Below, in pieces: positions 28,501 to 64,000 of a stretch of DNA of 64,000 bases. Under the pieces are notes generated by a model. It made no database searches, had not been told where the DNA came from, and saw only the letters and a program-made list of their open reading frames with translations. A program made the position numbers and the translations under genes. Positions within the stretch are counted from its first letter, which is position 1, and every line of letters starts with the position of its first letter. Source of the stretch: Lepidodermella squamata (Eukaryota > Animalia > Gastrotricha); the NCBI GenBank assembly GCA_047495785.1, contig JBLDXI010000029.1, positions 62,001 through 126,000 on the forward strand, read 5' to 3'.

Positions 28501-29843
28501 GCTTTTTGAATATTTCTACGAAATTGAGGCAATGCACGAATTCCATAGTGAAGAATGCGTCTTTTACAGGATTTTACGCTGAATTTAATGATTATTTATT
28601 TCAAATTATGCTGATAAATCATGAAAAGCTTGACAGACTCGAAAAGTGGCTTTAGGCCCATTGAAAAAAGCCAAAATTTGGTTCCGCTAAAAGTAAGACC
28701 CAAATTTTAATATCCCAGTACTCCCAACATAAACAGAAATTCAAAGATTATTACGAATCATCAAGCTTCACCTGTGAAATATTGCTCAGGTGAAACCTTC
28801 TCAGGCGGCAAAAATTCAACAAGCTTACCAGTTTTTGGCGTTACAGGTTCCTTCCGCCGGCGCTTCTGCGACGGTCGTGAGCTTTTGTCGATGAGCCGGT
28901 GCTCGGCCATGTGTTTGCGATGTTGAGCCGCGTCGCAAAACACAACGCCGCAATCGCGACATTGAAACTGCTGACTGAAAGACTGCTGCACGTTCTGGTC
29001 GCCGGTGTGGTTACGAGCCACGTGCTCGTCCAGTTCAACCTGCACGTCAAACTCGGCTAAGCAGAGTCGGCACGCCAGGGTGTCGTCGACCTGGTGGATC
29101 CGCATGTGCGAAATCAGCCCAGCGACACGAAGGAACCGTTTATCGCAGATGGGGCAACTCGAATCTGGCGTCAAATCGTGACTCGCCTCGTGCAGCACCA
29201 AATTGCGCTCAACGTTAAAGCTAGCCGAGCACGATCGGCATTTTAGAGGCTTCTCTTTGCGATGATCTGCTAAATGCCGTTTCATTTGCCGCGCCCTGCC
29301 AAACTCGGCCGAGCATCTATCACAACGATAACGACCATCTTCAAGCTGGAGCCGCGCTAATTCATCTTCTTCGCTTATCGTCAAATGTTGCTGTTCTTCA
29401 TATTGTTGCACAAACTGTATTTGAGAGCTGCCACCAGCAGCGTTTGGCGGTAAAATCAAAACTTGGTTGCCTGCTTGATTTTGATGCTTTTTCTGAAGAT
29501 CAGCCAGCGTAATGAGAGTTGAACGGTTTTGATCTGAAAGCTCGTAACCACCTTCAGTCGCTTCAAGCAACTGATCCTGCGAGATTTCGATAGTTTGTCC
29601 GTTCTCAGTTTGTACGGTAAATGGGCCCGAGACAAACTGTTGAATCGGAACTGAGCCAGCATTGTCACCAGTCAACACCAAAGTAGAAAATTGAGGTAAT
29701 ATGAGGATGGTTTCACCATCTTGAGTCGTATAAGCCGATGGGGCTATCACACCGTTAGCTGGAAAATCGCCATTGATTTGAATAAGCGACTGCAAAGAGT
29801 CAAGGGGTATTGAAGTCGTAGTGTATTCCACGACGTCCCCCAT
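22524..29843 (-). CDS. ZNF236: ZNF236-like multi-C2H2 zinc-finger protein (about 1473 aa, about 21 fingers). Exons 29843-28829, 28210-27765, 27218-26275, 25168-23906, 23277-22524
   Basis: Five exons join in frame and complete split fingers (HIK|SCH, AR|HMGDMH). The first finger cluster (SFNVERNLVLH, CPICDKRFLRVAGLISHMRIH, ACRLCLAEF) resembles the ZNF236 N-terminal fingers as recalled; orthology needs a phylogeny. Confidence 0.78.
28448..28689. mobile_element. Possible small MITE in the first coding intron of the zinc-finger gene
   Basis: Perfect 14-bp inverted repeat TAGCGGAACCAAAT (28448-28461) / ATTTGGTTCCGCTA (28676-28689), with an extra internal GCGGAACC copy. Confidence 0.45.
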
Positions 29844-31681: not shown

Positions 31682-32492
31682 TAGAGTAAATTAATTTAGT
31701 AGTTTGATTATTGCCTAATGCTGGTCTGAAACTACTACCAAGTTGAGTCGCGTTCAGATTGATTTTTCCAGGAAATTTTTAAATTCTACTGTTATGATGC
31801 TCCAAATCGGCCAGGTCGTTTTGGCCCTTTATGCGGTCTACAGTCAACAGCTATTCTATTTAGATTCCGGCAACCAAAAATGCTCACGACTCACGTCATG
31901 AGAGATTAACTGAACTAATAGGAATACTTGATACATAGACCACGAGTGAGCTAAGTGAGAATTTGTTTGCAAAATAACAAGTAACACTTGTAGGAAATGC
32001 ATTTTTAGCATTTCAACTCTAAGCGCTTAACCGAAGGCAGTTAGCATTTATCTGATGTTAACATGAGTGTGCGCTGCAAGCGCTTAACTCACGACCTTTT
32101 CCAGGAAAACTTCGGTTCTCACAAGATTCCGGTGGCCCTCTCAAATTTAAATTTTAATGTAAATAAAATTTACAATAAAATTGTAAGCTCATGATGGCGA
32201 TCAGCGAGCTTGTGTCTGTAAGTAAGGCGTGATGAATTGGATCGATATCGCTGCACAGATATTATCGAGAATGTCAGAATTGTGTTTGATTGAGCATAGC
32301 TGACAATTATGCTGCAGTTGAAATATCCAAACGCTAATTGTCTAGAACTAAGCTTAACAATGTTCTTACTTTTGTTTAGGACTTCGTGTAATTGATTTTT
32401 TTTATGTTACTGGTTCAGCGATTCGGTTTCTTCGAAAAACGTGGCGTATTGGTAGATAAAATGCTAATTTTTCTCGTTAATTTTTTATAGTA

Positions 32493-35400
32493 ATGAGAGC
32501 GTCGAAACGCTTCTTAAGTGGCAAGTTTATTTACGAATGATTAATTTTGTTGATAATAATTCTTTGTTTGCAGGATTTATATTACTGTTGCTAATCGGCG
32601 GAGTATTTGGGAAAATTTCGAAACCTCCTCCAAAGAAGGTGTGATTCACAGGATGATCATTATTATGAATTGACGTGAAGTGACGTGTTTTCGGCCTGAC
32701 CTTGATAATGCATGGAAACCCTACTACTGACATCTGATAATTGCTTCAAAATGAAACGGATTGAATTTGGCTGACAAAAATCGCATGAAAAAACTATGAA
32801 CATGTTAGGCGCCACAATGAACTGATTGGTGTTTTGTTTGCTGTGTTAAAGCCCTTTTGAGTGTGATCACAAGCTTTTCACCCAATAACAATAAAATTTA
32901 ACTAATTTGACCGCACGAGTGTGTTTTCAACTTGACATTCCGATTTCTTGAAGCAAAGAGAACTGATTACAAGCTATTTTCTATAACGAAATACAATACA
33001 GGAGTTGGCAACAAAACATAGCTCGCATCACAATGATAAAACCAGCATTCCTAGTGAGTTGATATCAAAACCAATAAATTGCCAGACTTTAAAAGTTATA
33101 CGCATTGCAGCAAACAACAATGCCATTCCCAGTAAGTTCACAAGCTACGCAGCCGAAATTGTGATATCAGCCACAACCGCTTCACTCCACTTTAGATTCG
33201 AAGGTTAGCAATCAGAACAGCAAGGACACGGACCAAGATGGAATTCCGGACGATTTAGACGATGACGACGATGGAGATGGAATTCTAGGTTTGTTGCTGC
33301 CGATTAACCACAACTAATGTTTACTCCCATCACTGTTTGGGTTTTACCACAATATTTCAGATGACTCATCAGGCAAGAGAAAGAAAAACACATTTTTGCT
33401 TTACCCTTTAGATTAGAGTTCTGCCTTCACAGTAGCTTTAGATCTATGACTGCTTCTTTGCGAATATTTTGCTAGCTTGAAAAACTATTTATCAAGGTGC
33501 TCATTAATACGCTTGTTCACTCGGATTTAGATCTCGACGACTGGGACGATGATGGCAACGGAATTCCTGATTTCGAGGAGCGTGACTCAGATGGTGATGG
33601 TATACCGGGTGAGTGAAATTGTAGAAGAGAATATTATCAATGCTCGGAATACTCAATTATGCTGGAGCATATTGAGAGAGATTCACCTTTTTTATTATTA
33701 TGACAACTTCAACATACTATCATAGATTTCATGGACCTCGATGACGACAATGATGGCGTTTTAGGTGAGATGATTTAATCCCGAAAAGTGAGAGTCTACA
33801 ATTTTAAACTCTTAAGACATCATTGGAGTCGATACGGATCGAGATGGCATACCAGGTTTGATGAAAAAACTGTCCATAACAGGGGAGACAAGTTCACTGA
33901 AAATGATTAGATTATTTGGACGATGACGATGATAACGACGGAATTCCAGGTAGTATATTTACTTATCAATCAAGACAATTGACGACCACAATATCTGAAC
34001 AGACGAGAAAGATGACGACGACGACGGTGACGGAAAACCAGACGCTGACGAGCGAGGTATGTTTTAGATTTAATGAAACAAAATCAAAGCAGCAGTTCAG
34101 CACTCCAACCTTAGAATTCTTGTTGAGCTTCGAATTGACGCTTTCAATGATATTTTTCAGACGCGCTAGACGACGATGATGACAACGACGGCATTTCTGA
34201 TGCCGACGAAAAGAAGGATTCGGATGGTGATGGCGTGCCAGGTAAGCGCACTTGGAACGGCTGGTTCGGGAGCGCGAGTTGCATCATTGTGTTTCTTTGT
34301 TCGCAGATTATCTCGACGACGATGATGATAACGATGGCATCCCAGATTCGCAAGACAACGATGATGATGGCGATGGCATTCCGGACGACCAGGAAGACAG
34401 CGATGGCGACGGTGTGCCAGGTTAGTTCCGGGCCGTGATGTGCAACTGCGCGTTGTGGGGAGGGCACCGTTGGGTATTGCGTTGCGAAAGGCTGAAATGT
34501 GCGGGGTTGCGAGCTTTCGAGCTTAGCCCAGCTAGGTTCGGGGATTGTCGGTTGGGTTTCACTTCCGGGCTGGCCTGCGTTTGGAATAGGTTGGCGGTAG
34601 TTCCCGGGTTGCGGGATTGAGGTTCGCTGGGAATCTCGTGCGTGCATGGCGCAGGTGGCGCTGGGTTTCGAGCTTCGAATTCTTGTTGAGCTTCGAATTG
34701 ACGCTTTCAATGATATTTTTCAGACGCGCTAGACGACGATGATGACAACGACGGCATTTCTGATGCCGACGAAAAGAAGGATTCGGATGGTGATGGCGTG
34801 CCAGGTAAGCGCACTTGGAACGGCTGGTTCGGGAGCGCGAGTTGCATCATTGTGTTTCTTTGTTCGCAGATTATCTCGACGACGATGATGATAACGATGG
34901 CATCCCAGATTCGCAAGACAACGATGATGATGGCGATGGCATTCCGGACGACCAGGAAGACAGCGATGGCGACGGTGTGCCAGGTTAGTTCCGGGCCGTG
35001 ATGTGCAACTGCGCGTTGTGGGGAGGGCACCGTTGGGTATTGCGTTGCGAAAGGCTGAAATGTGCGGGGTTGCGAGCTTTCGAGCTTAGCCCAGCTAGGT
35101 TCGGGGATTGTCGGTTGGGTTTCACTTCCGGGCTGGCATGCGTTTGGAATAGGTTGGCGGTAGTTCCCGGGTTGCGGGATTGAGGTTCGCTGGGAATCTC
35201 GTGCGTGCATGGCGCAGGTGGCGCTGGGTTTCGAGCTTCGAATTCTTGTTGAGCTTCGAATTGACGCTTTCAATGATATTTTTCAGACGCGCTAGACGAC
35301 GATGATGACAACGACGGCATTTCTGATGCCGACGAAAAGAAGGATTCGGATGGTGATGGCGTGCCAGGTAAGCGCACTTGGAACGGCTGGTTCGGGAGCG

Positions 35401-38400
35401 CGAGTTGCATCATTGTGTTTCTTTGTTCGCAGATTATCTCGACGACGATGATGATAACGATGGCATCCCAGATTCGCAAGACAACGATGATGATGGCGAT
35501 GGCATTCCGGACGACCAGGAAGACAGCGATGGCGACGGTGTGCCAGGTTAGTTCCGGGCCGTGATGTGCAACTGCGCGTTGTGGGGAGGGCACCGTTGGG
35601 TATTGCGTTGCGAAAGGCTGAAATGTGCGGGGTTGCGAGCTTTCGAGCTTAGCCCAGCTAGGTTCGGGGATTGTCGGTTGGGTTTCACTTCCGGGCTGGC
35701 ATGCGTTTGGAATAGGTTGGCGGTAGTTCCCGGGTTGCGGGATTGAGGTTCGCTGGGAATCTCGTGCGTGCATGGCGCAGGTGGCGCTGGGTTTCGAGCT
35801 TCGAATTCTTGTTGAGCTTCGAATTGACGCTTTCAATGATATTTTTCAGACGCGCTAGACGACGATGATGACAACGACGGCATTTCTGATGCCGACGAAA
35901 AGAAGGATTCGGATGGTGATGGCGTGCCAGGTAAGCGCACTTGGAACGGCTGGTTCGGGAGCGCGAGTTGCATCATTGTGTTTCTTTGTTCGCAGATTAT
36001 CTCGACGACGATGATGATAACGATGGCATCCCAGATTCGCAAGACAACGATGATGATGGCGATGGCATTCCGGACGACCAGGAAGACAGCGATGGCGACG
36101 GTGTGCCAGGTTAGTTCCGGGCCGTGATGTGCAACTGCGCGTTGTGGGGAGGGCACCGTTGGGTATTGCGTTGCGAAAGGCTGAAATGTGCGGGGTTGCG
36201 AGCTTTCGAGCTTAGCCCAGCTAGGTTCGGGGATTGTCGGTTGGGTTTCACTTCCGGGCTGGCCTGCGTTTGGAATAGGTTGGCGGTAGTTCCCGGGTTG
36301 CGGGATTGAGGTTCGCTGGGAATCTCGTGCGTGCATGGCGCAGGTGGCGCTGGGTTTCGAGCTTCGAATTCTTGTTGAGCTTCGAATTGACGCTTTCAAT
36401 GATATTTTTCAGACGCGCTAGACGACGATGATGACAACGACGGCATTTCTGATGCCGACGAAAAGAAGGATTCGGATGGTGATGGCGTGCCAGGTAAGCG
36501 CACTTGGAACGGCTGGTTCGGGAGCGCGAGTTGCATCATTGTGTTTCTTTGTTCGCAGATTATCTCGACGACGATGATGATAACGATGGCATCCCAGATT
36601 CGCAAGACAACGATGATGATGGCGATGGCATTCCGGACGACCAGGAAGACAGCGATGGCGACGGTGTGCCAGGTTAGTTCCGGGCCGTGATGTGCAACTG
36701 CGCGTTGTGGGGAGGGCACCGTTGGGTATTGCGTTGCGAAAGGCTGAAATGTGCGGGGTTGCGAGCTTTCGAGCTTAGCCCAGCTAGGTTCGGGGATTGT
36801 CGGTTGGGTTTCACTTCCGGGCTGGCATGCGTTTGGAATAGGTTGGCGGTAGTTCCCGGGTTGCGGGATTGAGGTTCGCTGGGAATCTCGTGCGTGCATG
36901 GCGCAGGTGGCGCTGGGTTTCGAGCTTCGAATTCTTGTTGAGCTTCGAATTGACGCTTTCAATGATATTTTTCAGACGCGCTAGACGACGATGATGACAA
37001 CGACGGCATTTCTGATGCCGACGAAAAGAAGGATTCGGATGGTGATGGCGTGCCAGGTAAGCGCACTTGGAACGGCTGGTTCGGGAGCGCGAGTTGCATC
37101 ATTGTGTTTCTTTGTTCGCAGATTATCTCGACGACGATGATGATAACGATGGCATCCCAGATTCGCAAGACAACGATGATGATGGCGATGGCATTCCGGA
37201 CGACCAGGAAGACAGCGATGGCGACGGTGTGCCAGGTTAGTTCCGGGCCGTGATGTGCAACTGCGCGTTGTGGGGAGGGCACCGTTGGGTATTGCGTTGC
37301 GAAAGGCTGAAATGTGCGGGGTTGCGAGCTTTCGAGCTTAGCCCAGCTAGGTTCGGGGATTGTCGGTTGGGTTTCACTTCCGGGCTGGCCTGCGTTTGGA
37401 ATAGGTTGGCGGTAGTTCCCGGGTTGCGGGATTGAGGTTCGCTGGGAATCTCGTGCGTGCATGGCGCAGGTGGCGCTGGGTTTCGAGCTTCGAATTCTTG
37501 TTGAGCTTCGAATTGACGCTTTCAATGATATTTTTCAGACGCGCTAGACGACGATGATGACAACGACGGCATTTCTGATGCCGACGAAAAGAAGGATTCG
37601 GATGGTGATGGCGTGCCAGGTAAGCGCACTTGGAACGGCTGGTTCGGGAGCGCGAGTTGCATCATTGTGTTTCTTTGTTCGCAGATTATCTCGACGACGA
37701 TGATGATAACGATGGCATCCCAGATTCGCAAGACAACGATGATGATGGCGATGGCATTCCGGACGACCAGGAAGACAGCGATGGCGACGGTGTGCCAGGT
37801 TAGTTCCGGGCCGTGATGTGCAACTGCGCGTTGTGGGGAGGGCACCGTTGGGTATTGCGTTGCGAAAGGCTGAAATGTGCGGGGTTGCGAGCTTTCGAGC
37901 TTAGCCCAGCTAGGTTCGGGGATTGTCGGTTGGGTTTCACTTCCGGGCTGGCCTGCGTTTGGAATAGGTTGGCGGTAGTTCCCGGGTTGCGGGATTGAGG
38001 TTCGCTGGGAATCTCGTGCGTGCATGGCGCAGGTGGCGCTGGGTTTCGAGCTTCGAATTCTTGTTGAGCTTCGAATTGACGCTTTCAATGATATTTTTCA
38101 GACGCGCTAGACGACGATGATGACAACGACGGCATTTCTGATGCCGACGAAAAGAAGGATTCGGATGGTGATGGCGTGCCAGGTAAGCGCACTTGGAACG
38201 GCTGGTTCGGGAGCGCGAGTTGCATCATTGTGTTTCTTTGTTCGCAGATTATCTCGACGACGATGATGATAACGATGGCATCCCAGATTCGCAAGACAAC
38301 GATGATGATGGCGATGGCATTCCGGACGACCAGGAAGACAGCGATGGCGACGGTGTGCCAGGTTAGTTCCGGGCCGTGATGTGCAACTGCGCGTTGTGGG

Positions 38401-41400
38401 GAGGGCACCGTTGGGTATTGCGTTGCGAAAGGCTGAAATGTGCGGGGTTGCGAGCTTTCGAGCTTAGCCCAGCTAGGTTCGGGGATTGTCGGTTGGGTTT
38501 CACTTCCGGGCTGGCCTGCGTTTGGAATAGGTTGGCGGTAGTTCCCGGGTTGCGGGATTGAGGTTCGCTGGGAATCTCGTGCGTGCATGGCGCAGGTGGC
38601 GCTGGGTTTCGAGCTCAGAATTCTTGTTGAGCTTCGAATTGACGCTTTCAATGATATTTTTCAGACGCGCTAGACGACGATGATGACAACGACGGCATTT
38701 CTGATGCCGACGAAAAGAAGGATTCGGATGGTGATGGCGTGCCAGGTAAGCGCACTTGGAACGGCTGGTTCGGGAGCGCGAGTTGCATCATTGTGTTTCT
38801 TTGTTCGCAGATTATCTCGACGACGATGATGATAACGATGGCATCCCAGATTCGCAAGACAACGATGATGATGGCGATGGCATTCCGGACGACCAGGAAG
38901 ACAGCGATGGCGACGGTGTGCCAGGTTAGTTCCGGGCCGTGATGTGCAACTGCGCGTTGTGGGGAGGGCACCGTTGGGTATTGCGTTGCGAAAGGCTGAA
39001 ATGTGCGGGGTTGCGAGCTTTCGAGCTTAGCCCAGCTAGGTTCGGGGATTGTCGGTTGGGTTTCACTTCCGGGCTGGCCTGCGTTTGGAATAGGTTGGCG
39101 GTAGTTCCCGGGTTGCGGGATTGAGGTTCGCTGGGAATCTCGTGCGTGCATGGCGCAGGTGGCGCTGGGTTTCGAGCTTCGAATTCTTGTTGAGCTTCGA
39201 ATTGACGCTTTCAATGATATTTTTCAGACGCGCTAGACGACGATGATGACAACGACGGCATTTCTGATGCCGACGAAAAGAAGGATTCGGATGGTGATGG
39301 CGTGCCAGGTAAGCGCACTTGGAACGGCTGGTTCGGGAGCGCGAGTTGCATCATTGTGTTTCTTTGTTCGCAGATTATCTCGACGACGATGATGATAACG
39401 ATGGCATCCCAGATTCGCAAGACAACGATGATGATGGCGATGGCATTCCGGACGACCAGGAAGACAGCGATGGCGACGGTGTGCCAGGTTAGTTCCGGGC
39501 CGTGATGTGCAACTGCGCGTTGTGGGGAGGGCACCGTTGGGTATTGCGTTGCGAAAGGCTGAAATGTGCGGGGTTGCGAGCTTTCGAGCTTAGCCCAGCT
39601 AGGTTCGGGGATTGTCGGTTGGGTTTCACTTCCGGGCTGGCATGCGTTTGGAATAGGTTGGCGGTAGTTCCCGGGTTGCGGGATTGAGGTTCGCTGGGAA
39701 TCTCGTGCGTGCATGGCGCAGGTGGCGCTGGGTTTCGAGCTTCGAATTCTTGTTGAGCTTCGAATTGACGCTTTCAATGATATTTTTCAGACGCGCTAGA
39801 CGACGATGATGACAACGACGGCATTTCTGATGCCGACGAAAAGAAGGATTCGGATGGTGATGGCGTGCCAGGTAAGCGCACTTGGAACGGCTGGTTCGGG
39901 AGCGCGAGTTGCATCATTGTGTTTCTTTGTTCGCAGATTATCTCGACGACGATGATGATAACGATGGCATCCCAGATTCGCAAGACAACGATGATGATGG
40001 CGATGGCATTCCGGACGACCAGGAAGACAGCGATGGCGACGGTGTGCCAGGTTAGTTCCGGGCCGTGATGTGCAACTGCGCGTTGTGGGGAGGGCACCGT
40101 TGGGTATTGCGTTGCGAAAGGCTGAAATGTGCGGGGTTGCGAGCTTTCGAGCTTAGCCCAGCTAGGTTCGGGGATTGTCGGTTGGGTTTCACTTCCGGGC
40201 TGGCCTGCGTTTGGAATAGGTTGGCGGTAGTTCCCGGGTTGCGGGATTGAGGTTCGCTGGGAATCTCGTGCGTGCATGGCGCAGGTGGCGCTGGGTTTCG
40301 AGCTTCGAATTCTTGTTGAGCTTCGAATTGACGCTTTCAATGATATTTTTCAGACGCGCTAGACGACGATGATGACAACGACGGCATTTCTGATGCCGAC
40401 GAAAAGAAGGATTCGGATGGTGATGGCGTGCCAGGTAAGCGCACTTGGAACGGCTGGTTCGGGAGCGCGAGTTGCATCATTGTGTTTCTTTGTTCGCAGA
40501 TTATCTCGACGACGATGATGATAACGATGGCATCCCAGATTCGCAAGACAACGATGATGATGGCGATGGCATTCCGGACGACCAGGAAGACAGCGATGGC
40601 GACGGTGTGCCAGGTTAGTTCCGGGCCGTGATGTGCAACTGCGCGTTGTGGGGAGGGCACCGTTGGGTATTGCGTTGCGAAAGGCTGAAATGTGCGGGGT
40701 TGCGAGCTTTCGAGCTTAGCCCAGCTAGGTTCGGGGATTGTCGGTTGGGTTTCACTTCCGGGCTGGCCTGCGTTTGGAATAGGTTGGCGGTAGTTCCCGG
40801 GTTGCGGGATTGAGGTTCGCTGGGAATCTCGTGCGTGCATGGCGCAGGTGGCGCTGGGTTTCGAGCTCAGAATTCTTGTTGAGCTTCGAATTGACGCTTT
40901 CAATGATATTTTTCAGACGCGCTAGACGACGATGATGACAACGACGGCATTTCTGATGCCGACGAAAAGAAGGATTCGGATGGTGATGGCGTGCCAGGTA
41001 AGCGCACTTGGAACGGCTGGTTCGGGAGCGCGAGTTGCATCATTGTGTTTCTTTGTTCGCAGATTATCTCGACGACGATGATGATAACGATGGCATCCCA
41101 GATTCGCAAGACAACGATGATGATGGCGATGGCATTCCGGACGACCAGGAAGACAGCGATGGCGACGGTGTGCCAGGTTAGTTCCGGGCCGTGATGTGCA
41201 ACTGCGCGTTGTGGGGAGGGCACCGTTGGGTATTGCGTTGCGAAAGGCTGAAATGTGCGGGGTTGCGAGCTTTCGAGCTTAGCCCAGCTAGGTTCGGGGA
41301 TTGTCGGTTGGGTTTCACTTCCGGGCTGGCCTGCGTTTGGAATAGGTTGGCGGTAGTTCCCGGGTTGCGGGATTGAGGTTCGCTGGGAATCTCGTGCGTG

Positions 41401-53400: not shown

Positions 53401-56400
53401 GGCTGGTTCGGGAGCGCGAGTTGCATCATTGTGTTTCTTTGTTCGCAGATTATCTCGACGACGATGATGATAACGATGGCATCCCAGATTCGCAAGACAA
53501 GGATGATGATGGCGATGGCATTCCGGACGACCAGGAAGACAGCGATGGCGACGGTGTGCCAGGTTAGTTCCGGGCCGTGATGTGCAACTGCGCGTTGTGG
53601 GGAGGGCACCGTTGGGTATTGCGTTGCGAAAGGCTGAAATGTGCGGGGTTGCGAGCTTTCGAGCTTAGCCCAGCTAGGTTCGGGGATTGTCGGTTGGGTT
53701 TCACTTCCGGGCTGGCATGCGTTTGGAATAGGTTGGCGGTAGTTCCCGGGTTGCGGGATTGAGGTTCGCTGGGAATCTCGTGCGTGCATGGCGCAGGTGG
53801 CGCTGGGTTTCGAGCTTCGAATTCTTGTTGAGCTTCGAATTGACGCTTTCAATGATATTTTTCAGACGCGCTAGACGACGATGATGACAACGACGGCATT
53901 TCTGATGCCGACGAAAAGAAGGATTCGGATGGTGATGGCGTGCCAGGTAAGCGCACTTGGAACGGCTGGTTCGGGAGCGCGAGTTGCATCATTGTGTTTC
54001 TTTGTTCGCAGATTATCTCGACGACGATGATGATAACGACGGCATCCCAGATTCGCAAGACAACGATGATGATGGCGATGGCATTCCGGACGACCAGGAA
54101 GACAGCGATGGCGACGGTGTGCCAGGTTAGTTCCGGGCCGTGATGTGCAACTGCGCGTTGTGGGGAGGGCACCGTTGGGTATTGCGTTGCGAAAGGCTGA
54201 AATGTGCGGGGTTGCGAGCTTTCGAGCTTAGCCCAGCTAGGTTCGGGGATTGTCGGTTGGGTTTCACTTCCGGGCTGGCATGCGTTTGGAATAGGTTGGC
54301 GGTAGTTCCCGGGTTGCGGGATTGAGGTTCGCTGGGAATCTCGTGCGTGCATGGCGCAGGTGGCGCTGGGTTTCGAGCTTCGAATTCTTGTTGAGCTTCG
54401 AATTGACGCTTTCAATGATATTTTTCAGACGCGCTAGACGACGATGATGACAACGACGGCATTTCTGATGCCGACGAAAAGAAGGATTCGGATGGTGATG
54501 GCGTGCCAGGTAAGCGCACTTGGAACGGCTGGTTCGGGAGCGCGAGTTGCATCATTGTGTTTCTTTGTTCGCAGATTATCTCGACGACGATGATGATAAC
54601 GATGGCATCCCAGATTCGCAAGACAAGGATGATGATGGCGATGGCATTCCGGACGACCAGGAAGACAGCGATGGCGACGGTGTGCCAGGTTAGTTCCGGG
54701 CCGTGATGTGCAACTGCGCGTTGTGGGGAGGGCACCGTTGGGTATTGCGTTGCGAAAGGCTGAAATGTGCGGGGTTGCGAGCTTTCGAGCTTAGCCCAGC
54801 TAGGTTCGGGGATTGTCGGTTGGGTTTCACTTCCGGGCTGGCATGCGTTTGGAATAGGTTGGCGGTAGTTCCCGGGTTGCGGGATTGAGGTTCGCTGGGA
54901 ATCTCGTGCGTGCATGGCGCAGGTGGCGCTGGGTTTCGAGCTTCGAATTCTTGTTGAGCTTCGAATTGACGCTTTCAATGATATTTTTCAGACGCGCTAG
55001 ACGACGATGATGACAACGACGGCATTTCTGATGCCGACGAAAAGAAGGATTCGGATGGTGATGGCGTGCCAGGTAAGCGCACTTGGAACGGCTGGTTCGG
55101 GAGCGCGAGTTGCATCATTGTGTTTCTTTGTTCGCAGATTATCTCGACGACGATGATGATAACGATGGCATCCCAGATTCGCAAGACAACGATGATGATG
55201 GCGATGGCATTCCGGACGACCAGGAAGACAGCGATGGCGACGGTGTGCCAGGTTAGTTCCGGGCCGTGATGTGCAACTGCGCGTTGTGGGGAGGGCACCG
55301 TTGGGTATTGCGTTGCGAAAGGCTGAAATGTGCGGGGTTGCGAGCTTTCGAGCTTAGCCCAGCTAGGTTCGGGGATTGTCGGTTGGGTTTCACTTCCGGG
55401 CTGGCCTGCGTTTGGAATAGGTTGGCGGTAGTTCCCGGGTTGCGGGATTGAGGTTCGCTGGGAATCTCGTGCGTGCATGGCGCAGGTGGCGCTGGGTTTC
55501 GAGCTTAGAATTCTTGTTGAGCTTCGAATTGACGCTTTCAATGATATTTTTCAGACGCGCTAGACGACGATGATGACAACGACGGCATTTCTGATGCCGA
55601 CGAAAAGAAGGATTCGGATGGTGATGGCGTGCCAGGTAAGCGCACTTGGAACGGCTGGTTCGGGAGCGCGAGTTGCATCATTGTGTTTCTTTGTTCGCAG
55701 ATTATCTCGACGACGATGATGATAACGATGGCATCCCAGATTCGCAAGACAACGATGATGATGGCGATGGCATTCCGGACGACCAGGAAGACAGCGATGG
55801 CGACGGTGTGCCAGGTTAGTTCCGGGCCGTGATGTGCAACTGCGCGTTGTGGGGAGGGCACCGTTGGGTATTGCGTTGCGAAAGGCTGAAATGTGCGGGG
55901 TTGCGAGCTTTCGAGCTTAGCCCAGCTAGGTTCGGGGATTGTCGGTTGGGTTTCACTTCCGGGCTGGCCTGCGTTTGGAATAGGTTGGCGGTAGTTCCCG
56001 GGTTGCGGGATTGAGGTTCGCTGGGAATCTCGTGCGTGCATGGCGCAGGTGGCGCTGGGTTTCGAGCTTAGAATTCTTGTTGAGCTTCGAATTGACGCTT
56101 TCAATGATATTTTTCAGACGCGCTAGACGACGATGATGACAACGACGGCATTTCTGATGCCGACGAAAAGAAGGATTCGGATGGTGATGGCGTGCCAGGT
56201 AAGCGCACTTGGAACGGCTGGTTCGGGAGCGCGAGTTGCATCATTGTGTTTCTTTGTTCGCAGATTATCTCGACGACGATGATGATAACGATGGCATCCC
56301 AGATTCGCAAGACAAGGATGATGATGGCGATGGCATTCCGGACGACCAGGAAGACAGCGATGGCGACGGTGTGCCAGGTTAGTTCCGGGCCGTGATGTGC

Positions 56401-59400
56401 AACTGCGCGTTGTGGGGAGGGCACCGTTGGGTATTGCGTTGCGAAAGGCTGAAATGTGCGGGGTTGCGAGCTTTCGAGCTTAGCTCAGCTAGGTTCGGGG
56501 ATTGCCGGTTGGGTTTCACTTCCGGGCTGGCATGCGTTTGGAATAGGTTGGCGGTAGTTCCCGGGTTGCGGGATTGAGGTTCGCTGGGAATCTCGTGCGT
56601 GCATGGCGCAGGTGGCGCTGGGTTTCGAGCTTCGAATTCTTGTTGAGCTTCGAATTGACGCTTTCAATGATATTTTTCAGACGCGCTAGACGACGATGAT
56701 GACAACGACGGCATTTCTGATGCCGACGAAAAGAAGGATTCGGATGGTGATGGCGTGCCAGGTAAGCGCACTTGGAACGGCTGGTTCGGGAGCGCGAGTT
56801 GCATCATTGTGTTTCTTTGTTCGCAGATTATCTCGACGACGATGATGATAACGATGGCATCCCAGATTCGCAAGACAACGATGATGATGGCGATGGCATT
56901 CCGGACGACCAGGAAGACAGCGATGGCGACGGTGTGCCAGGTTAGTTCCGGGCCGTGATGTGCAACTGCGCGTTGTGGGGAGGGCACCGTTGGGTATTGC
57001 GTTGCGAAAGGCTGAAATGTGCGGGGTTGCGAGCTTTCGAGCTTAGCCCAGCTAGGTTCGGGGATTGTCGGTTGGGTTTCACTTCCGGGCTGGCATGCGT
57101 TTGGAATAGGTTGGCGGTAGTTCCCGGGTTGCGGGATTGAGGTTCGCTGGGAATCTCGTGCGTGCATGGCGCAGGTGGCGCTGGGTTTCGAGCTTCGAAT
57201 TCTTGTTGAGCTTCGAATTGACGCTTTCAATGATATTTTTCAGACGCGCTAGACGACGATGATGACAACGACGGCATTTCTGATGCCGACGAAAAGAAGG
57301 ATTCGGATGGTGATGGCGTGCCAGGTAAGCGCACTTGGAACGGCTGGTTCGGGAGCGCGAGTTGCATCATTGTGTTTCTTTGTTCGCAGATTATCTCGAC
57401 GACGATGATGATAACGATGGCATCCCAGATTCGCAAGACAACGATGATGATGGCGATGGCATTCCGGACGACCAGGAAGACAGCGATGGCGACGGTGTGC
57501 CAGGTTAGTTCCGGGCCGTGATGTGCAACTGCGCGTTGTGGGGAGGGCACCGTTGGGTATTGCGTTGCGAAAGGCTGAAATGTGCGGGGTTGCGAGCTTT
57601 CGAGCTTAGCCCAGCTAGGTTCGGGGATTGTCGGTTGGGTTTCACTTCCGGGCTGGCCTGCGTTTGGAATAGGTTGGCGGTAGTTCCCGGGTTGCGGGAT
57701 TGAGGTTCGCTGGGAATCTCGTGCGTGCATGGCGCAGGTGGCGCTGGGTTTCGAGCTTAGAATTCTTGTTGAGCTTCGAATTGACGCTTTCAATGATATT
57801 TTTCAGACGCGCTAGACGACGATGATGACAACGACGGCATTTCTGATGCCGACGAAAAGAAGGATTCGGATGGTGATGGCGTGCCAGGTAAGCGCACTTG
57901 GAACGGCTGGTTCGGGAGCGCGAGTTGCATCATTGTGTTTCTTTGTTCGCAGATTATCTCGACGACGATGATGATAACGATGGCATCCCAGATTCGCAAG
58001 ACAACGATGATGATGGCGATGGCATTCCGGACGACCAGGAAGACAGCGATGGCGACGGTGTGCCAGGTTAGTTCCGGGCCGTGATGTGCAACTGCGCGTT
58101 GTGGGGAGGGCACCGTTGGGTATTGCGTTGCGAAAGGCTGAAATGTGCGGGGTTGCGAGCTTTCGAGCTTAGCCCAGCTAGGTTCGGGGATTGTCGGTTG
58201 GGTTTCACTTCCGGGCTGGCATGCGTTTGGAATAGGTTGGCGGTAGTTCCCGGGTTGCGGGATTGAGGTTCGCTGGGAATCTCGTGCGTGCATGGCGCAG
58301 GTGGCGCTGGGTTTCGAGCTTCGAATTCTTGTTGAGCTTCGAATTGACGCTTTCAATGATATTTTTCAGACGCGCTAGACGACGATGATGACAACGACGG
58401 CATTTCTGATGCCGACGAAAAGAAGGATTCGGATGGTGATGGCGTGCCAGGTAAGCGCACTTGGAACGGCTGGTTCGGGAGCGCGAGTTGCATCATTGTG
58501 TTTCTTTGTTCGCAGATTATCTCGACGACGATGATGATAACGATGGCATCCCAGATTCGCAAGACAAGGATGATGATGGCGATGGCATTCCGGACGACCA
58601 GGAAGACAGCGATGGCGACGGTGTGCCAGGTTAGTTCCGGGCCGTGATGTGCAACTGCGCGTTGTGGGGAGGGCACCGTTGGGTATTGCGTTGCGAAAGG
58701 CTGAAATGTGCGGGGTTGCGAGCTTTCGAGCTTAGCCCAGCTAGGTTCGGGGATTGTCGGTTGGGTTTCACTTCCGGGCTGGCCTGCGTTTGGAATAGGT
58801 TGGCGGTAGTTCCCGGGTTGCGGGATTGAGGTTCGCTGGGAATCTCGTGCGTGCATGGCGCAGGTGGCGCTGGGTTTCGAGCTTCGAATTCTTGTTGAGC
58901 TTCGAATTGACGCTTTCAATGATATTTTTCAGACGCGCTAGACGACGATGATGACAACGACGGCATTTCTGATGCCGACGAAAAGAAGGATTCGGATGGT
59001 GATGGCGTGCCAGGTAAGCGCACTTGGAACGGCTGGTTCGGGAGCGCGAGTTGCATCATTGTGTTTCTTTGTTCGCAGATTATCTCGACGACGATGATGA
59101 TAACGATGGCATCCCAGATTCGCAAGACAACGATGATGATGGCGATGGCATTCCGGACGACCAGGAAGACAGCGATGGCGACGGTGTGCCAGGTTAGTTC
59201 CGGGCCGTGATGTGCAACTGCGCGTTGTGGGGAGGGCACCGTTGGGTATTGCGTTGCGAAAGGCTGAAATGTGCGGGGTTGCGAGCTTTCGAGCTTAGCC
59301 CAGCTAGGTTCGGGGATTGTCGGTTGGGTTTCACTTCCGGGCTGGCATGCGTTTGGAATAGGTTGGCGGTAGTTCCCGGGTTGCGGGATTGAGGTTCGCT

Positions 59401-62400
59401 GGGAATCTCGTGCGTGCATGGCGCAGGTGGCGCTGGGTTTCGAGCTTCGAATTCTTGTTGAGCTTCGAATTGACGCTTTCAATACATACTTTCCAAATAC
59501 CGGTTACACATGGCAGAGGGGCAACGGGGCCAGACGAAAAAGATCATTTCTCGATTATATCCTGATTGATAAGAATATTAAAGACAAATTTTCATTCTGC
59601 GACATTGAAGAAACACCCATTCTTGAATCAGATCATAGGCTGGTCAGAGGCGTCATCGACTGCCCAAATTTCAATCGAAAGAAAGAAATTATTAAAAAGT
59701 CGATCAAGCACCATTTATTGCGAAAAGAAGAATACGCTGGAAAATTCAATGAAAATTTAACTGTTAACACTCGAATTTTGTCGAACGAGCCAAAATCTAT
59801 TGAAGAAAACTGGTCTACTACCAAGGCTAATCTTCTTGACACCGCTAGGGAAACCTGCGGAGAAAGGAAAGTTGGCACGGTCAGTGAAAAACCCCCGTGG
59901 TGGTCCCCATTAGCCAATGAAATCATTCAAAAAGGCAAGGAAAATTTTAAAAATTATACCAAGGGCCGCATTTCAAGAGAGGAATTCACGCGAAATAGGA
60001 ACCAGAAAAACCATGCTCTAGAGCGAGTGAAACTCTTGAAAGACCAGAACGAATTTGCCGAATTAGATAAACTTCTGGAAAATCCCTTTGATTACGATAA
60101 CATCAAAAAATTTTGGCATGAAATCAAACGAATCCGAGGCGAAGGAAGAAGTAAAGGTGAACCAGACCCACTCGAAAAATCGGATGGCTCGCTAACGGAC
60201 AGTATTGACGAAATCTTGGAAGTGATGAAAAGTTATTTCATGGAGCTCTTAGAGGGACTAGAGAACCAACCTCATGACCCCGATCCTGAACCCGAACCAC
60301 CCGATTTAACTAATCTCACCGAAATTACCCAGGCCGAAATTGAGGGAGCTATTGATCACATGAAAAACGGGAAGGCCCCGGGAATTGACGAAATTAGACC
60401 TGAGATGATCAAAGCTTTGTCAGAAACAAATATCAAATGGTTAGGTGAAATTTTAAATCAAGCCTGGCGGGAAAAGAAGGTCCCCGAGGAATGGTCCACC
60501 GCCCTTATTACTCCGATTTATAAAAATAAGGGTGAAAAATCCAAGTGTCAAAACTATCGAGGCATCAGTCTGCTTTCTGTTGTAGGTAAACTTTATGCTG
60601 TTATCCTCGAAAGAAAACTAAGGTCTTTGATTGGATCGAAAATCTCCAAATTACAATTCGGATTTCAGCCTCTTAAAGGCACCCGTGATTGTATTTTTGT
60701 TCTTAGACAAATAATTGAAAAAATTATTTTCTTTCGCAAAGAACTTCATCTTGTCTTCATTGACCTCGAAAAAGCCTATGATCTGGTTGATAGGGAAAAG
60801 GTTTGGACAGCCTTGGAAAACATGGGTGTTGAAACTAGCCTTATTGACGCGATTAAGAGTCTATATAAAGTAAATAAAGTTGCGGTAAAAGTGGATTCTG
60901 AGGTCTCCGATTTTTTCTATGTAACTAGGGGTCTAAGGCAAGGCTGCCCGCTGTCCCCTCTGCTTTTCATTGCTACTTTTAACAAAATTTGCGAAAAATT
61001 ATACGACACAAAATTTGGTTTCCCTATGAACAACGGTGATTATCTAAATTTATTAGCTTTCGCCGATGATGGAACTCTCCTAGGCATGAACCATGACGAA
61101 ATTAAGCGCCTTCTAGAAATTTTTGACATGGCATGCGAAGAATTAGGATTGAAAATTAACGTGGCAAAAACTCAATACATGATCATTTCCAGGGACGATG
61201 CTGCAATAAGAAATTATGAACTAGAGCTGCGCGGATCGAAACTGGAAAAGGTTTCCAAATTCAAATACTTAGGTAGCATTATAACCAGCGACGGTCGCAT
61301 TGACGAAGAATTAAATTATAGAATTTCAAAGGCTGGCAGCGTATTTGGTGCGATAAATAAATTCATGTGCAGTAGGAATCATGTGTCATTACAAACCAAA
61401 TTGAAAGTACTCACTTGCGTCATCGTACCTACCATCATTTACGCCTGCGAATCCTGGAATATTTCTTTAAGCCAGGAAAATAGGTTGAATGTTTTAGAAT
61501 ATCGTTGGCTACGAGCGATTTTAGGTATACACCTGATGGATTATATTCCTAACATTGACATTAGATTGGCATTGTGCGGAGGTCTGATCGAAGTCAGCCG
61601 CATCATTGAAAAACAGCGTTTAAGATATCTAGGACACATCATTAGATCTCGTGATTACGATGAGTACGGCCTTCTGAACTTGATTTATACGTGGACACCT
61701 CCGTTCGGGTGGTTCGCACCGAGAGGCAGACCTCGAACTAGGTGGATAAACGGCATAAACAGAAGTCTACACAAGGTTGGCATTGTTAAGGAAGTTCGCC
61801 GGAAGAAAAGACAACCAAAAAATCAGAAAGGCAAAAAGCCAGCTAAAAACAAAAAATCCGGCGAAAAAGAAAATAAATTTGAAATTAAAATTATTCCTGA
61901 TCTGCAATTGACTGAATTACTTTCTTTTGATAAAATTGAATGGCGCAACATTGTTGACTCAATGAATGATTATGAATTTTTTGGAAAAAGTAGAATCTTC
62001 AACTGTGGGGGTGGGTGATTTCCATCTTTCGCCTGCCTTCGCCCTCCTCAAAACCGTTTTTACGGTATAGATGCTTAATCGAGAGGAGGACTAAATAAAA
62101 CCATTATTATTATTATTATTATGATATTTTTCAGACGCGCTAGACGACGATGATGACAACGACGGCATTTCTGATGCCGACGAAAAGAAGGATTCGGATG
62201 GTGATGGCGTGCCAGGTAAGCGCACTTGGAACGGCTGGTTCGGGAGCGCGAGTTGCATCATTGTGTTTCTTTGTTCGCAGATTATCTCGACGACGATGAT
62301 GATAACGATGGCATCCCAGATTCGCAAGACAAGGATGATGATGGCGATGGCATTCCGGACGACCAGGAAGACAGCGATGGCGACGGTGTGCCAGGTTAGT

Positions 62401-64000
62401 TCCGGGCCGTGATGTGCAACTGCGCGTTGTGGGGAGGGCACCGTTGGGTATTGCGTTGCGAAAGGCTGAAATGTGCGGGGTTGCGAGCTTTCGAGCTTAG
62501 CCCAGCTAGGTTCGGGGATTGTCGGTTGGGTTTCACTTCCGGGCTGGCATGCGTTTGGAATAGGTTGGCGGTAGTTCCCGGGTTGCGGTATTGAGGTTCG
62601 CTGGGAATCTCGTGCGTGCATGGCGCAGGTGGCGCTGGGTTTCGAGCTTCGAACTCTTGTTGAGCTTCGAATTGACGCTTTCAATGATATTTTTCAGACG
62701 CGCTAGACGACGATGATGACAACGACGGCATTTCTGATGCCGACGAAAAGAAGGATTCGGATGGTGATGGCGTGCCAGGTAAGCGCACTTGGAACGGCTG
62801 GTTCGGGAGCGCGAGTTGCATCATTGTGTTTCTTTGTTCGCAGATTATCTCGACGACGATGATGATAACGATGGCATCCCAGATTCGCAAGACAACGATG
62901 ATGATGGCGATGGCATTCCGGACGACCAGGAAGACAGCGATGGCGACGGTGTGCCAGGTTAGTTCCGGGCGGTGATGTGCAACTGCGCGTTGTGGGGAGG
63001 GCACCGTTGGGTATTGCGTTGCGAAAGGCTGAAATGTGCGCGGTTGTGAGCTTTCGAGCTTAGCCCAGCTAGGTTCGGGGATTGTCGGTTGGGTTTCACT
63101 TCCGGGCTGGCATGCGTTTGGAATAGGTTGGCGGTAGTTCCCGGGTTGCGGTATTGAGGTTCGCTGGGAATCTCGTGCGTGCATGGCGCAGGTGGCGCTG
63201 GGTTTCGAGCTTCGAATTGACGCTTTCAATGATATTTTTCAGACGCGCTAGACGACGATGATGACAACGACGGCATTTCTGATGCCGACGAAAAGAAGGA
63301 TTCGGATGGTGATGGCGTGCCAGGTAAGCGCACTTGGAACGGCTGGTTCGGGAGCGCGAGTTGCATCATTGTGTTTCTTTGTTCGCAGATTATCTCGACG
63401 ACGATGATGATAACGATGGCATCCCAGATTCGCAAGACAACGATGATGATGGCGATGGCATTCCGGACGACCAGGAAGACAGCGATGGCGACGGTGTGCC
63501 AGGTTAGTTCCGGGCCGTGATGTGCAACTGCGCGTTGTGGGGAGGGCACCGTTGGGTATTGCGTTGCGAAGGGCTGAAATGTGCGGGGTTGCGAGCTTTC
63601 GAGCTTAGCCCAGCTAGGTTCGGGGATTGTCGGTTGGGTTTCACTTCCGGGCTGGCATGCGTTTGGAATAGGTTGGCGGTAGTTCCCGGGTTGCGGGATT
63701 GAGGTTCGCTGGGAATCTCGTGCGTGCATGGCGCAGGTGGCGCTGGGTTTCGAGCTTCGAATTGACGCTTTCAATGATATTTTTCAGACGCGCTAGACGA
63801 CGATGATGACAACGACGGCATTTCTGATGCCGACGAAAAGAAGGATTCGGATGGTGATGGCGTGCCAGGTAAGCGCACTTGGAACGGCTGGTTCGGGAGC
63901 GCGAGTTGCATCATTGTGTTTCTTTGTTCGCAGATTATCTCGACGACGATGATGATAACGATGGCATCCCAGATTCGCAAGACAACGATGATGATGGCGA
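32493..64000 (+). CDS. Giant secreted Asp-rich protein of cysteine-free thrombospondin-type-3-like DxDxDGxxD repeats, 3'-partial. Unique exons 32493-32520, 32574-32638, 33002-33053, 33196-33288, 33531-33608, 33726-33764, 33817-33855, 33911-33949, 34003-34056; then repeated exon A (first 34161-34241) and exon B (first 34307-34420) every 563 bp
   Basis: Spliced translation MRASKRFLSGFILLLLIGGVFGKISKPPPKK..., then DTDQDGIPDDLDDDDDGDGIL and similar. Repeat unit DALDDDDDNDGISDADEKKDSDGDGVP|DYLDDDDDNDGIPDSQDNDDDGDGIPDDQEDSDGDGVP. Junctions tttttcag/AC, CCAG/gtaagc, ttcgcag/AT and CCAG/gttagt are canonical and all phase 1. The first three exons are less certain than the acidic exons. Confidence 0.85.
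34110..64000 (+). repeat. Tandem array of 563-bp units: 45 before the LINE, then 563, 545, 545 and a partial unit
   Basis: Exact 563-bp period (ORF track starts 34144 to 58916 = 44 x 563); only scattered SNVs between copies; 81+65+114+303 = 563. Confidence 0.98.
59484..62120 (+). mobile_element. 5'-truncated non-LTR retrotransposon (RTE-like clade) with the C-terminal end of the APE endonuclease and a complete reverse transcriptase; ORF stop at 62018
   Basis: APE end motifs (N)TYF...TW...LDYILI...ESDHRLV; RT motifs KAPGIDEI, PIYKNKG...NYRGISLLS, QFGF, FIDLEKAYD, GLRQGCPLSPLLF, LAFADD and FKYLGS; C-terminal GRPRTRW; (ATT)n tail at 62103-62120. It interrupts the array unit at ctttcaat/atgatatttttcag. 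Confidence 0.95.

What the first reader, a model, noticed from the sequence alone, without database searches (positions are those of the whole stretch)
32493..64000. Apparent satellite is a spliced gene for a giant secreted poly-aspartate calcium-binding-type protein
Seen: every 563-bp unit holds two exons with canonical splice sites that join in frame into 65 aa with 30 Asp, 2 Glu, 2 Lys, no Cys and five DxDxDGxxD motifs, two of which are completed only across splice junctions. Diverged single-copy exons with the same motif lie just upstream, preceded by a signal-peptide exon. At least 48 complete units give about 3,120 aa, about 240 motifs and a net charge near -1,400, and the gene continues past the window. 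No stop or frameshift was seen in any exon copy. Known: DxDxDGxxD is the calcium-binding motif of thrombospondin type 3 repeats; animal thrombospondins carry few, disulfide-linked copies, while Cys-free versions occur in bacterial surface proteins; very Asp-rich secreted proteins are typical of biomineral matrices. Inference: an undescribed extracellular calcium sponge or calcium-stiffened polymer for mineralisation, cuticle, adhesion or ion storage, likely to be masked as repeat by annotation pipelines.
Basis: partly seen in the sequence, partly recalled or inferred. Interest (0 to 1): 0.93.

Follow-up and report, generated by a model that had tools for sequence, protein, structure and literature searches.

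The report
Giant poly-aspartate calcium-repeat gene
What looks like a 563-bp satellite is a real, transcribed and correctly spliced animal gene for a protein of more than 3,300 residues that is 46% aspartate and carries about 250 thrombospondin-type calcium-binding loops; related species keep it under strong selection, but its function and its export from the cell are still untested.

Summary
From 34161 the window holds 48 complete units and one partial unit (45 of exactly 563 bp, over 99.5% identical). Each unit has an 81-nt and a 114-nt exon with GT-AG borders. Joined, they give 65 aa with 30 Asp, no Cys and five DxDxDGxxD motifs. The in-window model is 3,306 aa with 1,511 Asp and 250 motifs.

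New evidence:
- An RNA run holds a contig reading exon A-exon B-exon A, joined exactly at both predicted junctions. Intron depth is zero in that run, while a DNA run covers the introns at about 40-65 copies.
- Two upstream junctions (33608/33726 and 33949/34003) are also seen.
- Two metagenome contigs from related species carry the same array. Their exons are 92-97% identical and their introns about 60% (dN 0.01, dS 0.12-0.50). One of them lacks intron 1 precisely.
- The motif aligns to the type 3 repeats of COMP and just reaches the Pfam threshold for bacterial TSP3 repeats.

Still open:
- The join from the signal-peptide exon to the first acidic exon was not seen. RNA reads through that donor to an AATAAA signal near 32890.
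- The C-terminus lies outside the window.
- Calcium binding and function are inferred.

I found no described giant relative. The same scan had already noted this stretch, its LINE and its exon phases on this window.

The parts
32493..32520 (+). Exon 1: start codon and the positively charged start of a signal peptide (MRASKRFLS-). An in-frame stop lies 5 codons upstream.
   Evidence: Sequence reading. RNA depth begins in bin 32460-32551.
32521..32573 (+). Intron 1 of the gene, 53 nt, GC-AG type with donor G|GCAAGT.
Evidence: RNA joint 32519>32573 with 2 ambiguous letters. It rests on one odd contig with only 26 letters on the shorter side, so it is tentative.
32574..32638 (+). Exon 2: hydrophobic core of the signal peptide (FILLLLIGGVFG) followed by a Lys/Pro-rich linker (KISKPPPKK).
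   Evidence: Hydropathy of about 3.0 over 11 residues. Covered by RNA contigs.
32639..32904 (+). Read-through of the exon 2 donor: an alternative 3' end with AATAAA at 32890-32895. This form would encode only a 32-aa peptide.
   Evidence: Overlapping RNA contigs cover 32573-32904, depth 14-19, and none lies beyond that point.
33216..33288 (+). Exon 3: first acidic exon (phase 0 to 1). An alternative acceptor at 33197 would need a phase-1 upstream exon.
   Evidence: In-frame motif DTDQDGIPD. RNA depth is low, about 1, and no junction to exon 2 was seen.
33531..33608 (+). Exon 4: 78 nt, phase 1-1, two diverged motifs.
   Evidence: Its donor is confirmed by RNA joint 33608/33726, GT..AG, depth 14.
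33726..33764 (+). Exon 5: 39 nt, one motif.
   Evidence: Its acceptor is confirmed by the same RNA joint.
33817..33855 (+). Exon 6: 39 nt, one motif.
   Evidence: Canonical AG/GT borders and in frame. No junction was listed.
33911..33949 (+). Exon 7: 39 nt, one motif.
   Evidence: Its donor is confirmed by RNA joint 33949/34003, GT..AG.
34003..34056 (+). Exon 8: 54 nt, the last single-copy acidic exon.
   Evidence: Its acceptor is confirmed by the same joint. The join to the first array exon was not listed.
34161..59483 (+). Array, units 1-45 of 563 bp each. Each unit is exon A (81 nt), intron 1 (65 nt), exon B (114 nt) and intron 2 (303 nt). The repeated sequence already begins about 34113, inside the preceding intron.
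   Evidence: An RNA contig of 225 nt, depth 145, reads A-B-A spliced at 34241/34307 and 34420>34161; intron depth is 0 in RNA and 2,200-6,700 in DNA.
59484..62122 (+). 5'-truncated LINE, 2,639 bp, in sense orientation inside intron 2 of unit 45, 12 nt before the next exon. It has an open reverse-transcriptase frame, its own AATAAA (62093-62098) and an (ATT)n tail.
   Evidence: Sequence. An 866-aa ORF at 59418-62018 matches RVT_1 at 3.7e-36.
62135..64000 (+). Array, units 46-49: one of 563 bp, two of 545 bp (18-bp deletion in intron 2) and one cut by the window end inside exon B.

Best explanation
This is a genuine protein-coding gene of a small-intron invertebrate, hidden in a satellite-like array.

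Shown: about 49 near-identical 563-bp units each supply two phase-1 exons. These are spliced head to tail into an mRNA that encodes a homopolymer of 65-aa modules. Each module holds five Cys-free thrombospondin type 3-like DxDxDGxxD loops.

Inferred mechanism: each loop chelates calcium through its Asp side chains, as in thrombospondin/COMP type 3 repeats and bacterial TSP3 repeats. A chain of 3,300 or more residues with about 250 loops and net charge near -1,500 would be an expanded polyanion without calcium. In millimolar calcium it would load with hundreds of ions and compact or stiffen. That makes it a very high-capacity calcium buffer or a calcium-switched polymer.

Inferred entry route: it most likely enters the secretory pathway through the signal peptide encoded by exons 1-2.

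Origin of the array: because all acidic exons are symmetric phase 1-1, unequal crossing-over can add or remove units without breaking the frame. This explains the homogeneous array.
For: - Spliced RNA: a contig reads A-B-A with both predicted junctions, the introns have zero RNA depth, and two upstream junctions are GT..AG on the + strand.
- DNA depth of about 40-65 copies shows the array is not an assembly artefact.
- Contigs L001 and L002 from related species keep the 65-aa unit with 1-2 replacements. Synonymous sites and introns diverge: dS 0.50 and 0.12, dN about 0.01, introns about 60% identical.
- L001 lacks intron 1 exactly at the predicted borders.
- Pfam TSP3_bac scores 25.1-25.4 bits against a cutoff of 25. 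COMP (3FBY) type 3 repeats align with E 0.025 and share DDDDDNDG-PDS-DN.
- A 63-aa bacterial TSP3 domain is described as binding four calcium ions through loops without secondary structure (PMC12152738).
- The AlphaFold model of one unit is nearly all loop, mean pLDDT 73.
- Signal-peptide features of exons 1-2 are good. First exons of relatives in other animals carry a signal peptide, a basic linker and then the same motifs (P0296, P0298, P0307, P0308).
Against: - The exon 2 to exon 3 junction and the exon 8 to array junction were not observed.
- RNA reads through the exon 2 donor to a poly(A) signal, so exons 1-2 could be a separate short transcript.
- Short contigs cannot show that all 49 units sit in one mRNA.
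- The Pfam TSP_3 model stays below threshold, 15-16 bits against 25.
- Fold searches of the one-unit model found nothing.
- No calcium-binding measurement, tissue or protein-level evidence exists, and the C-terminus is unknown.
Confidence: 0.6

Rival explanations
1. The acidic gene is real but not secreted. Exons 1-2 would be a separate tiny gene or a dead-end isoform. The poly-Asp protein would start elsewhere, for example from the small ATG exons at 33034-33055 or 33120-33132 joined to an acceptor at 33197, or after trans-splicing. It would then act inside the cell as a polyanion or cytosolic calcium buffer.
For: RNA contigs run unspliced from 32573 to 32904 and stop after AATAAA, and no exon 2-exon 3 joint is listed. 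Alternative ATG mini-exons with strong donors, in phase with an acceptor at 33197, can be read in the sequence.
Against: Those mini-exons have no RNA depth: bins 32920-33195 are at 0. Exons 3 and 4 carry in-frame motifs and need an upstream start. Relatives in other animals start with a signal peptide directly followed by the motifs. TSP3-type loops are known from extracellular or luminal proteins (general knowledge).
Confidence: 0.2
2. It is a resident calcium store of the ER or secretory compartment, a functional analogue of calsequestrin, rather than an exported matrix polymer.
For: The predicted calcium capacity is very high.
Against: The C-terminus lies outside the window, so no retention signal can be checked. 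No thioredoxin-like calsequestrin domains are present.
Confidence: 0.12
3. It is the polyanionic partner, or the release agent, of a charge-based secreted glue. It would pair with the giant polycationic repeat protein noted elsewhere in this genome.
For: An earlier follow-up reports a giant, transcribed polycationic repeat protein in the same genome (unchecked). Net charge here is about -1,500.
Against: This rests on composition only, with no co-expression or tissue data. The conserved DxDxDGxxD spacing points to specific ion binding rather than charge alone.
Confidence: 0.06
4. It is a transcribed satellite or decaying pseudogene whose open frame is kept only by recent amplification.
For: The units are over 99.5% identical including their introns, so the lack of stops within the array proves little.
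Against: Splicing is exact, and the introns are absent from RNA. dN/dS is about 0.02-0.1 against two other species while the introns diverged. Intron 1 is precisely absent in one of those species.
Confidence: 0.02

Closest known systems
Type 3 repeats of thrombospondins and COMP (Pfam PF02412; structure 3FBY)
   Same: Both have Asp-rich DxDxDGxxDxxD loops in a continuous run. The local match is near-identical: COMP has DDDDDNDGVPDSRDN and this protein DDDDDNDGIPDSQDN.
   Different: This protein has no cysteines, so it lacks the disulfide staples. It has about 250 loops instead of about 13. No EGF, coiled-coil or C-terminal lectin-like domain is seen in the window. The Pfam TSP_3 score is below threshold.
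Bacterial TSP3 repeats (Pfam PF18884), e.g. the Ulvibacter K3T domain tested for metal binding (PMC12152738)
   Same: Both are largely Cys-poor, Asp-rich loops with little secondary structure (the longer K3T construct has one disulfide bridge). The bacterial unit is of similar size: 63 aa described as binding four Ca. The Pfam score just reaches the cutoff.
   Different: This is an animal gene with spliceosomal introns, an animal-type signal peptide and relatives in other animals. It is also far longer and more homogeneous.
Uncharacterised animal proteins with the same loops: the Anopheles AGAP011747 group (MFS_1_like membrane protein, labelled 'dentin sialophosphoprotein-like'), a Spirometra hypothetical protein, and Owenia Ofus.G011730
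   Same: They carry runs of loops of the same DDDDDNDGIPD type (about 30 in the Anopheles protein), matching at 64-71% identity. A peptide DDDDDGDGIPDSK was detected by mass spectrometry in an earthworm (PMC11547318).
   Different: They have at most about 30 motifs and are 22-24% Asp. The loops are embedded in other domains or interrupted by spacers, and the proteins contain cysteines. None is a homopolymer.
Asp-rich biomineral matrix proteins (Aspein, Asprich) and calsequestrin
   Same: They share extreme acidity and a presumed high-capacity, low-affinity calcium binding (my own knowledge, not tested here).
   Different: No sequence relation was found. Those proteins lack the regular DxDxDGxxD loop, and calsequestrin is built of thioredoxin-like domains.
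Giant tandem-repeat secretory genes (Balbiani ring genes, mucins)
   Same: The gene is built as a long, homogenised tandem array that encodes one huge secreted polymer (my own knowledge).
   Different: Here every unit carries two introns, and the product is a calcium-loop polyanion, not a Cys/Pro/Ser/Thr-rich silk or mucin.

Membership tests
Thrombospondin type 3 repeat (PF02412) | Asp-rich DxDxDGxxDxxD calcium-binding consensus | tested here: met
   The spliced model has 250 DxDxDGxxD motifs. It aligns to COMP type 3 repeats, E 0.025.
Thrombospondin type 3 repeat (PF02412) | Score at or above the Pfam gathering threshold (25 bits) | tested here: not met
   Exon B scores 15.2 bits and one orthologous unit 16.4 bits. 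Only single exons or units could be given by reference, so the whole protein was not scored.
Thrombospondin type 3 repeat (PF02412) | Conserved cysteine pairs that staple each repeat | tested here: not met
   There is no Cys in 3,306 residues.
Thrombospondin family proper | EGF repeats, type 3 repeats and a C-terminal lectin-like domain in one chain | tested here: inconclusive
   None is present in the N-terminal 3,306 aa. The C-terminus lies outside the window.
Bacterial TSP3 repeat (PF18884) | Score at or above the Pfam gathering threshold (25 bits) | tested here: met
   Exon A scores 25.1 bits and the orthologous unit P0083 25.4 bits, both only just above the cutoff.
Bacterial TSP3 repeat (PF18884) | Occurs in bacterial surface or outer-membrane proteins | tested here: not met
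   This is a spliced animal gene with GT-AG introns removed from the RNA. Its neighbours are animal genes.
Calcium-binding protein (functional class) | Measured binding of calcium | not testable with these tools
   Inferred from the motif only. A related bacterial domain is described as binding Ca (PMC12152738).
Secreted protein | N-terminal signal peptide on the same mRNA as the mature chain | tested here: inconclusive
   Exons 1-2 have good signal-peptide features, but the junction to exon 3 was not seen and a read-through form exists. Relatives do have a signal peptide in their first exon.
Acidic biomineral matrix proteins (Aspein/Asprich type) | Presence in a mineralised tissue | not testable with these tools
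   The organism is not identified and no tissue data exist. Only the composition is similar (46% Asp).
RTX repeats | Nonapeptide GGxGxDxUx forming a beta-roll | tested here: not met
   The unit sequence has a 13-aa loop period, and no RTX family appears in the Pfam scans.

The most novel reading that the evidence does not exclude
One secreted chain of 3,300 or more residues and about 250 Cys-free calcium loops would be the highest-capacity calcium-binding polypeptide yet proposed. It would work as a calcium-switched extracellular polymer (store, mineral regulator or glue partner). It would also represent a widespread, unannotated animal family built on a conserved 65-aa five-loop exon. In addition, an intron gained or lost in one unit appears to have spread through the whole array by concerted evolution.
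Probability: 0.3. Interest if true: 0.8.

Novelty: new variant of a known kind. Interest (0 to 1): 0.66.

Why it matters
- Repeat masking can hide a large, expressed and selected gene. Here, array homogeneity alone would have led to a call of 'satellite'.
- The product is an extreme case of a known calcium-binding loop, freed from disulfides and multiplied about 250 times. It gives a natural model for calcium-driven folding of polyanions and for calcium storage or mineral control in a small invertebrate.
- Because such loops also bind lanthanides (PMC12152738), it may be a template for metal-binding materials.
- The same 65-aa five-loop exon occurs in other, unannotated animal contigs, which points to an unstudied protein family.
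- The presence or absence of an intron across a homogenised array is a clean case for studying intron turnover under concerted evolution.

Tried and rejected
- Tandem Repeats Finder missed the array because its longest period is 500. Anchors in a script were used instead.
- My first exon B coordinates were off by 2 nt and gave nonsense protein and an empty Pfam result. This was corrected.
- Organism: the DUS neighbour has no exact record. The Atlas gave only 'Eukaryota'. The large protein search gave at best 44-47% identity to insects, nematodes, mites and fungi. The species stays unidentified; another agent's guess of 'rotifer' is unchecked.
- Search for the 5' region in related species: the exon 4 protein was too short for the search for related loci. 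A degenerate DNA pattern hit only a bacterial sugar-binding protein by chance (L007).
- Fold searches of the one-unit model found nothing, with Foldseek on PDB or with VIA-align wide. This is uninformative for a loop-only model.
- No Rfam family was found in 32000-35300.
- Intron 1 is not a copy of intron 2: the local alignment scores no better than shuffles.
- The minus-strand 188-aa ORF in each unit is rejected as a gene, because it needs the introns, which are absent from RNA.
- Six literature searches found no description of such a protein.
- The whole spliced protein could not be given to Pfam, homology or structure tools, because it has no reference and I did not type long sequences. Single exons and the orthologous fragment P0083 were used instead.
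Full report
**1. What is in the sequence**

From 34161 to the window end the + strand holds a very regular array. Anchors at the two acceptor sites occur 49 times each. Forty-four successive spacings are exactly 563 bp. One spacing is 3202 bp (563 plus an insert), followed by 563, 545 and 545. Forty-four units compared column by column differ at only 11 positions. GC content and GC skew are flat across the array and drop only at 58-62 kb, where the insert lies.

Each unit consists of:
- exon A, 81 nt;
- a 65-nt intron;
- exon B, 114 nt;
- a 303-nt intron.

All 97 borders checked are AG/GT. Spliced, a unit gives 65 residues with 30 Asp, no Cys and five DxDxDGxxD motifs. Only three of the five are visible without splicing: 148 motifs in six-frame translation against 250 in the model. 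Together with eight single-copy exons upstream (32493-34056), the in-window model is 3,306 aa with 1,511 Asp, no stop and net charge about -1,495.

Because the units are more than 99.5% identical including their introns, the absence of stops across copies is not independent evidence.

**2. Is it a gene? RNA evidence**

One RNA run (X1) and one DNA run (X2) hold this stretch. Laid on 32000-34730, X1 gives a 225-nt contig of depth 145. It reads part of exon A, then exon B, then exon A again. The joins are exactly at 34241/34307 (GT..AG, skipping 65) and from 34420 back to 34161.

X1 has zero depth over intron 2. X2 covers the same intron at 2,200-6,700 against 36-58 for single-copy flanks. So X1 is RNA, the introns are removed, and the genome of X2 holds roughly 40-65 units. 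That number agrees with the 49 units assembled here and argues against an assembly artefact. It also suggests the array does not extend far beyond the window.

Two upstream junctions are also confirmed as GT..AG: 33608/33726 and 33949/34003. The GT..AG direction puts the transcript on the + strand. Loose ends and one odd joint show further, diverged exons of the same kind elsewhere, either later in this gene or in paralogues.

**3. Selection**

A search of 1.84 billion representative proteins with exon B returned two short ORFs that turned out to be genomic contigs of related organisms.

- L002 (ENA assembly, 587 bp) has the same two-exon unit with a period of 532.
- L001 (JGI metagenome, 1,055 bp) has a period of 457. 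Its exons A and B are fused into one 195-nt exon, so intron 1 is absent exactly at the predicted borders.

The 65-aa unit differs by one residue in L001 and two in L002. Exon DNA is 92% and 97% identical. Intron 2 is about 60% identical and intron 1 is 78%. By Nei-Gojobori counting, dS is 0.50 and dN 0.010 against L001, and dS is 0.12 and dN 0.013 against L002. This is purifying selection on the predicted frame. The precise absence of the intron is a second, independent confirmation of the exon borders.

More distant contigs from other unidentified animals (L003-L006; L003 carries an L2-like LINE) hold tandem 195-nt exons with the same five loops in the same order, each ending in phase 1. The five-loop 65-aa exon therefore looks like the older module. 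Intron 1 was probably gained in the lineage of the window species and L002 and then spread through the array. This polarity is an inference.

**4. What kind of protein**

- Pfam: exon A reaches TSP3_bac at 25.1 bits (cutoff 25) and the orthologous unit reaches 25.4. TSP_3 stays at 15-16 bits.
- PDB sequences: one unit matches only COMP (3FBY), in its type 3 repeats, with E 0.025 and a near-identical local stretch.
- AlphaFold: a model of one unit built on 12 aligned relatives is almost all loop, with mean pLDDT 73. Fold searches found nothing, which says little for such a model.
- Literature: a paper on metal-binding peptides describes a 63-aa bacterial TSP3 domain as Asp-rich, without secondary structure and binding four calcium ions (PMC12152738).

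By analogy, each 65-aa unit should bind several calcium ions and the whole chain several hundred. This is inferred, not measured.

**5. Relatives and novelty**

None of the 150 best matches exceeds 29% Asp, and none is a homopolymer. The named relatives are:
- an Anopheles MFS_1_like membrane protein with about 30 such loops, labelled 'dentin sialophosphoprotein-like';
- a tapeworm hypothetical protein.

A peptide of this motif was detected in earthworm and mapped to an uncharacterised Owenia protein (PMC11547318). Six literature searches found no study of such proteins. The loop type is therefore known, its Cys-free form in animals exists but is unstudied, and the giant homopolymer is a new variant.

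**6. The weak point: the N-terminus**

Exons 1-2 encode a good signal peptide: three positive charges, an 11-residue core with hydropathy about 3.0, and small residues before the likely cut. A Lys/Pro-rich linker follows. RNA supports a GC-AG intron between them with donor G|GCAAGT, but only through one odd contig with 26 letters on one side.

RNA contigs then run unspliced from 32573 to 32904, past the proposed donor at 32638. They stop 14 nt after an AATAAA at 32890. That form encodes only 32 residues. No joint from 32638 to 33216 was listed, and exon 3 has depth of about 1.

The link is therefore unproven. Alternative small ATG exons at 33034 and 33120 are possible on paper but have no RNA depth. 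Three points favour the link:
- Exons 3-4 carry in-frame motifs and need an upstream start.
- The phases fit.
- First exons of relatives in other animals carry a signal peptide, a basic linker and the same motifs in one exon (P0296, P0298, P0307, P0308).

I put secretory-pathway entry at about 0.7.

**7. Other features**

- A 2,639-bp, 5'-truncated LINE in sense orientation lies in intron 2 of unit 45, 12 nt before the next exon. It has an open 866-aa frame with a reverse-transcriptase domain, its own AATAAA and an (ATT)n tail. It may truncate some transcripts.
- The minus strand has a 188-aa ORF per unit. It spans the introns, which are absent from RNA, so I reject it as a gene.
- Earlier notes of this scan, all unchecked, mention a small gene with a signal peptide, nine DxDxDG motifs and KEEL; a giant polycationic repeat protein; a spliced-leader gene; and a guess that the genome is a rotifer's. 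These feed the rival readings: ER store, glue partner, trans-spliced start.
- My own attempt to place the organism failed. The best hits to the DUS neighbour are 44-47% identical.

**8. Verdict**

The reading as a spliced, selected gene for a giant Cys-free TSP3-type poly-Asp protein is well supported. Secretion is likely but unproven, and function is inferred. The whole spliced protein could not be passed to the search tools, because it has no reference.

Noticed in passing
window 59484-62122: A young 5'-truncated LINE lies in sense orientation inside an intron of the array, 12 nt before the next exon. It has an intact 866-aa reverse-transcriptase frame, its own AATAAA at 62093 and an (ATT)n tail. 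It could cause premature polyadenylation of the host transcript.
   Followed up: partly
window 32573-32904: RNA contigs read through the exon 2 donor and end just after an AATAAA at 32890. This is either a short isoform or a separate transcript that encodes only a signal peptide plus KISKPPPKKV.
   Followed up: partly
window 32521-32573: Probable GC-AG intron with the typical GCAAGT donor. Just upstream of the ATG lies a pyrimidine-rich ...ttttttatag that looks like a possible trans-splice acceptor.
   Followed up: no
L001 415-609 versus window 34161-34420: Intron 1 is precisely absent in every unit of a related species' array, and in the 195-nt exons of more distant animals (L003-L006). An intron gain or loss seems to have been spread through a whole tandem array.
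   Followed up: partly
window 34144-34710 (minus strand), repeated in each unit: A 188-aa open frame on the opposite strand spans almost a whole unit. It is probably a by-product of the GAY-rich, G/T-rich composition, and RNA does not support it.
   Followed up: yes
window 62698-63787: Two units of 545 bp lack one copy of an 18-bp duplicated motif in intron 2. Five units carry an Asn-to-Lys change in exon B (unit position 199).
   Followed up: partly
window 22524-29843 (minus strand): A cluster of at least five genes with C2H2 zinc-finger-like sequence, with poly-Gln tracts and GC-rich exons. A Dus1-like gene lies at 16087-17235 and an alpha/beta-hydrolase gene at 19498-20490.
   Followed up: partly
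P0007 (UniParc UPI0006985C84), P0006 (Anopheles): Other eukaryotic layouts use the same Cys-free loops. In one, about 14 motifs sit between two copies of an unidentified ~130-aa domain. In the other, about 30 motifs are inserted in a loop of an MFS_1_like membrane protein that is mislabelled 'dentin sialophosphoprotein-like'.
   Followed up: no
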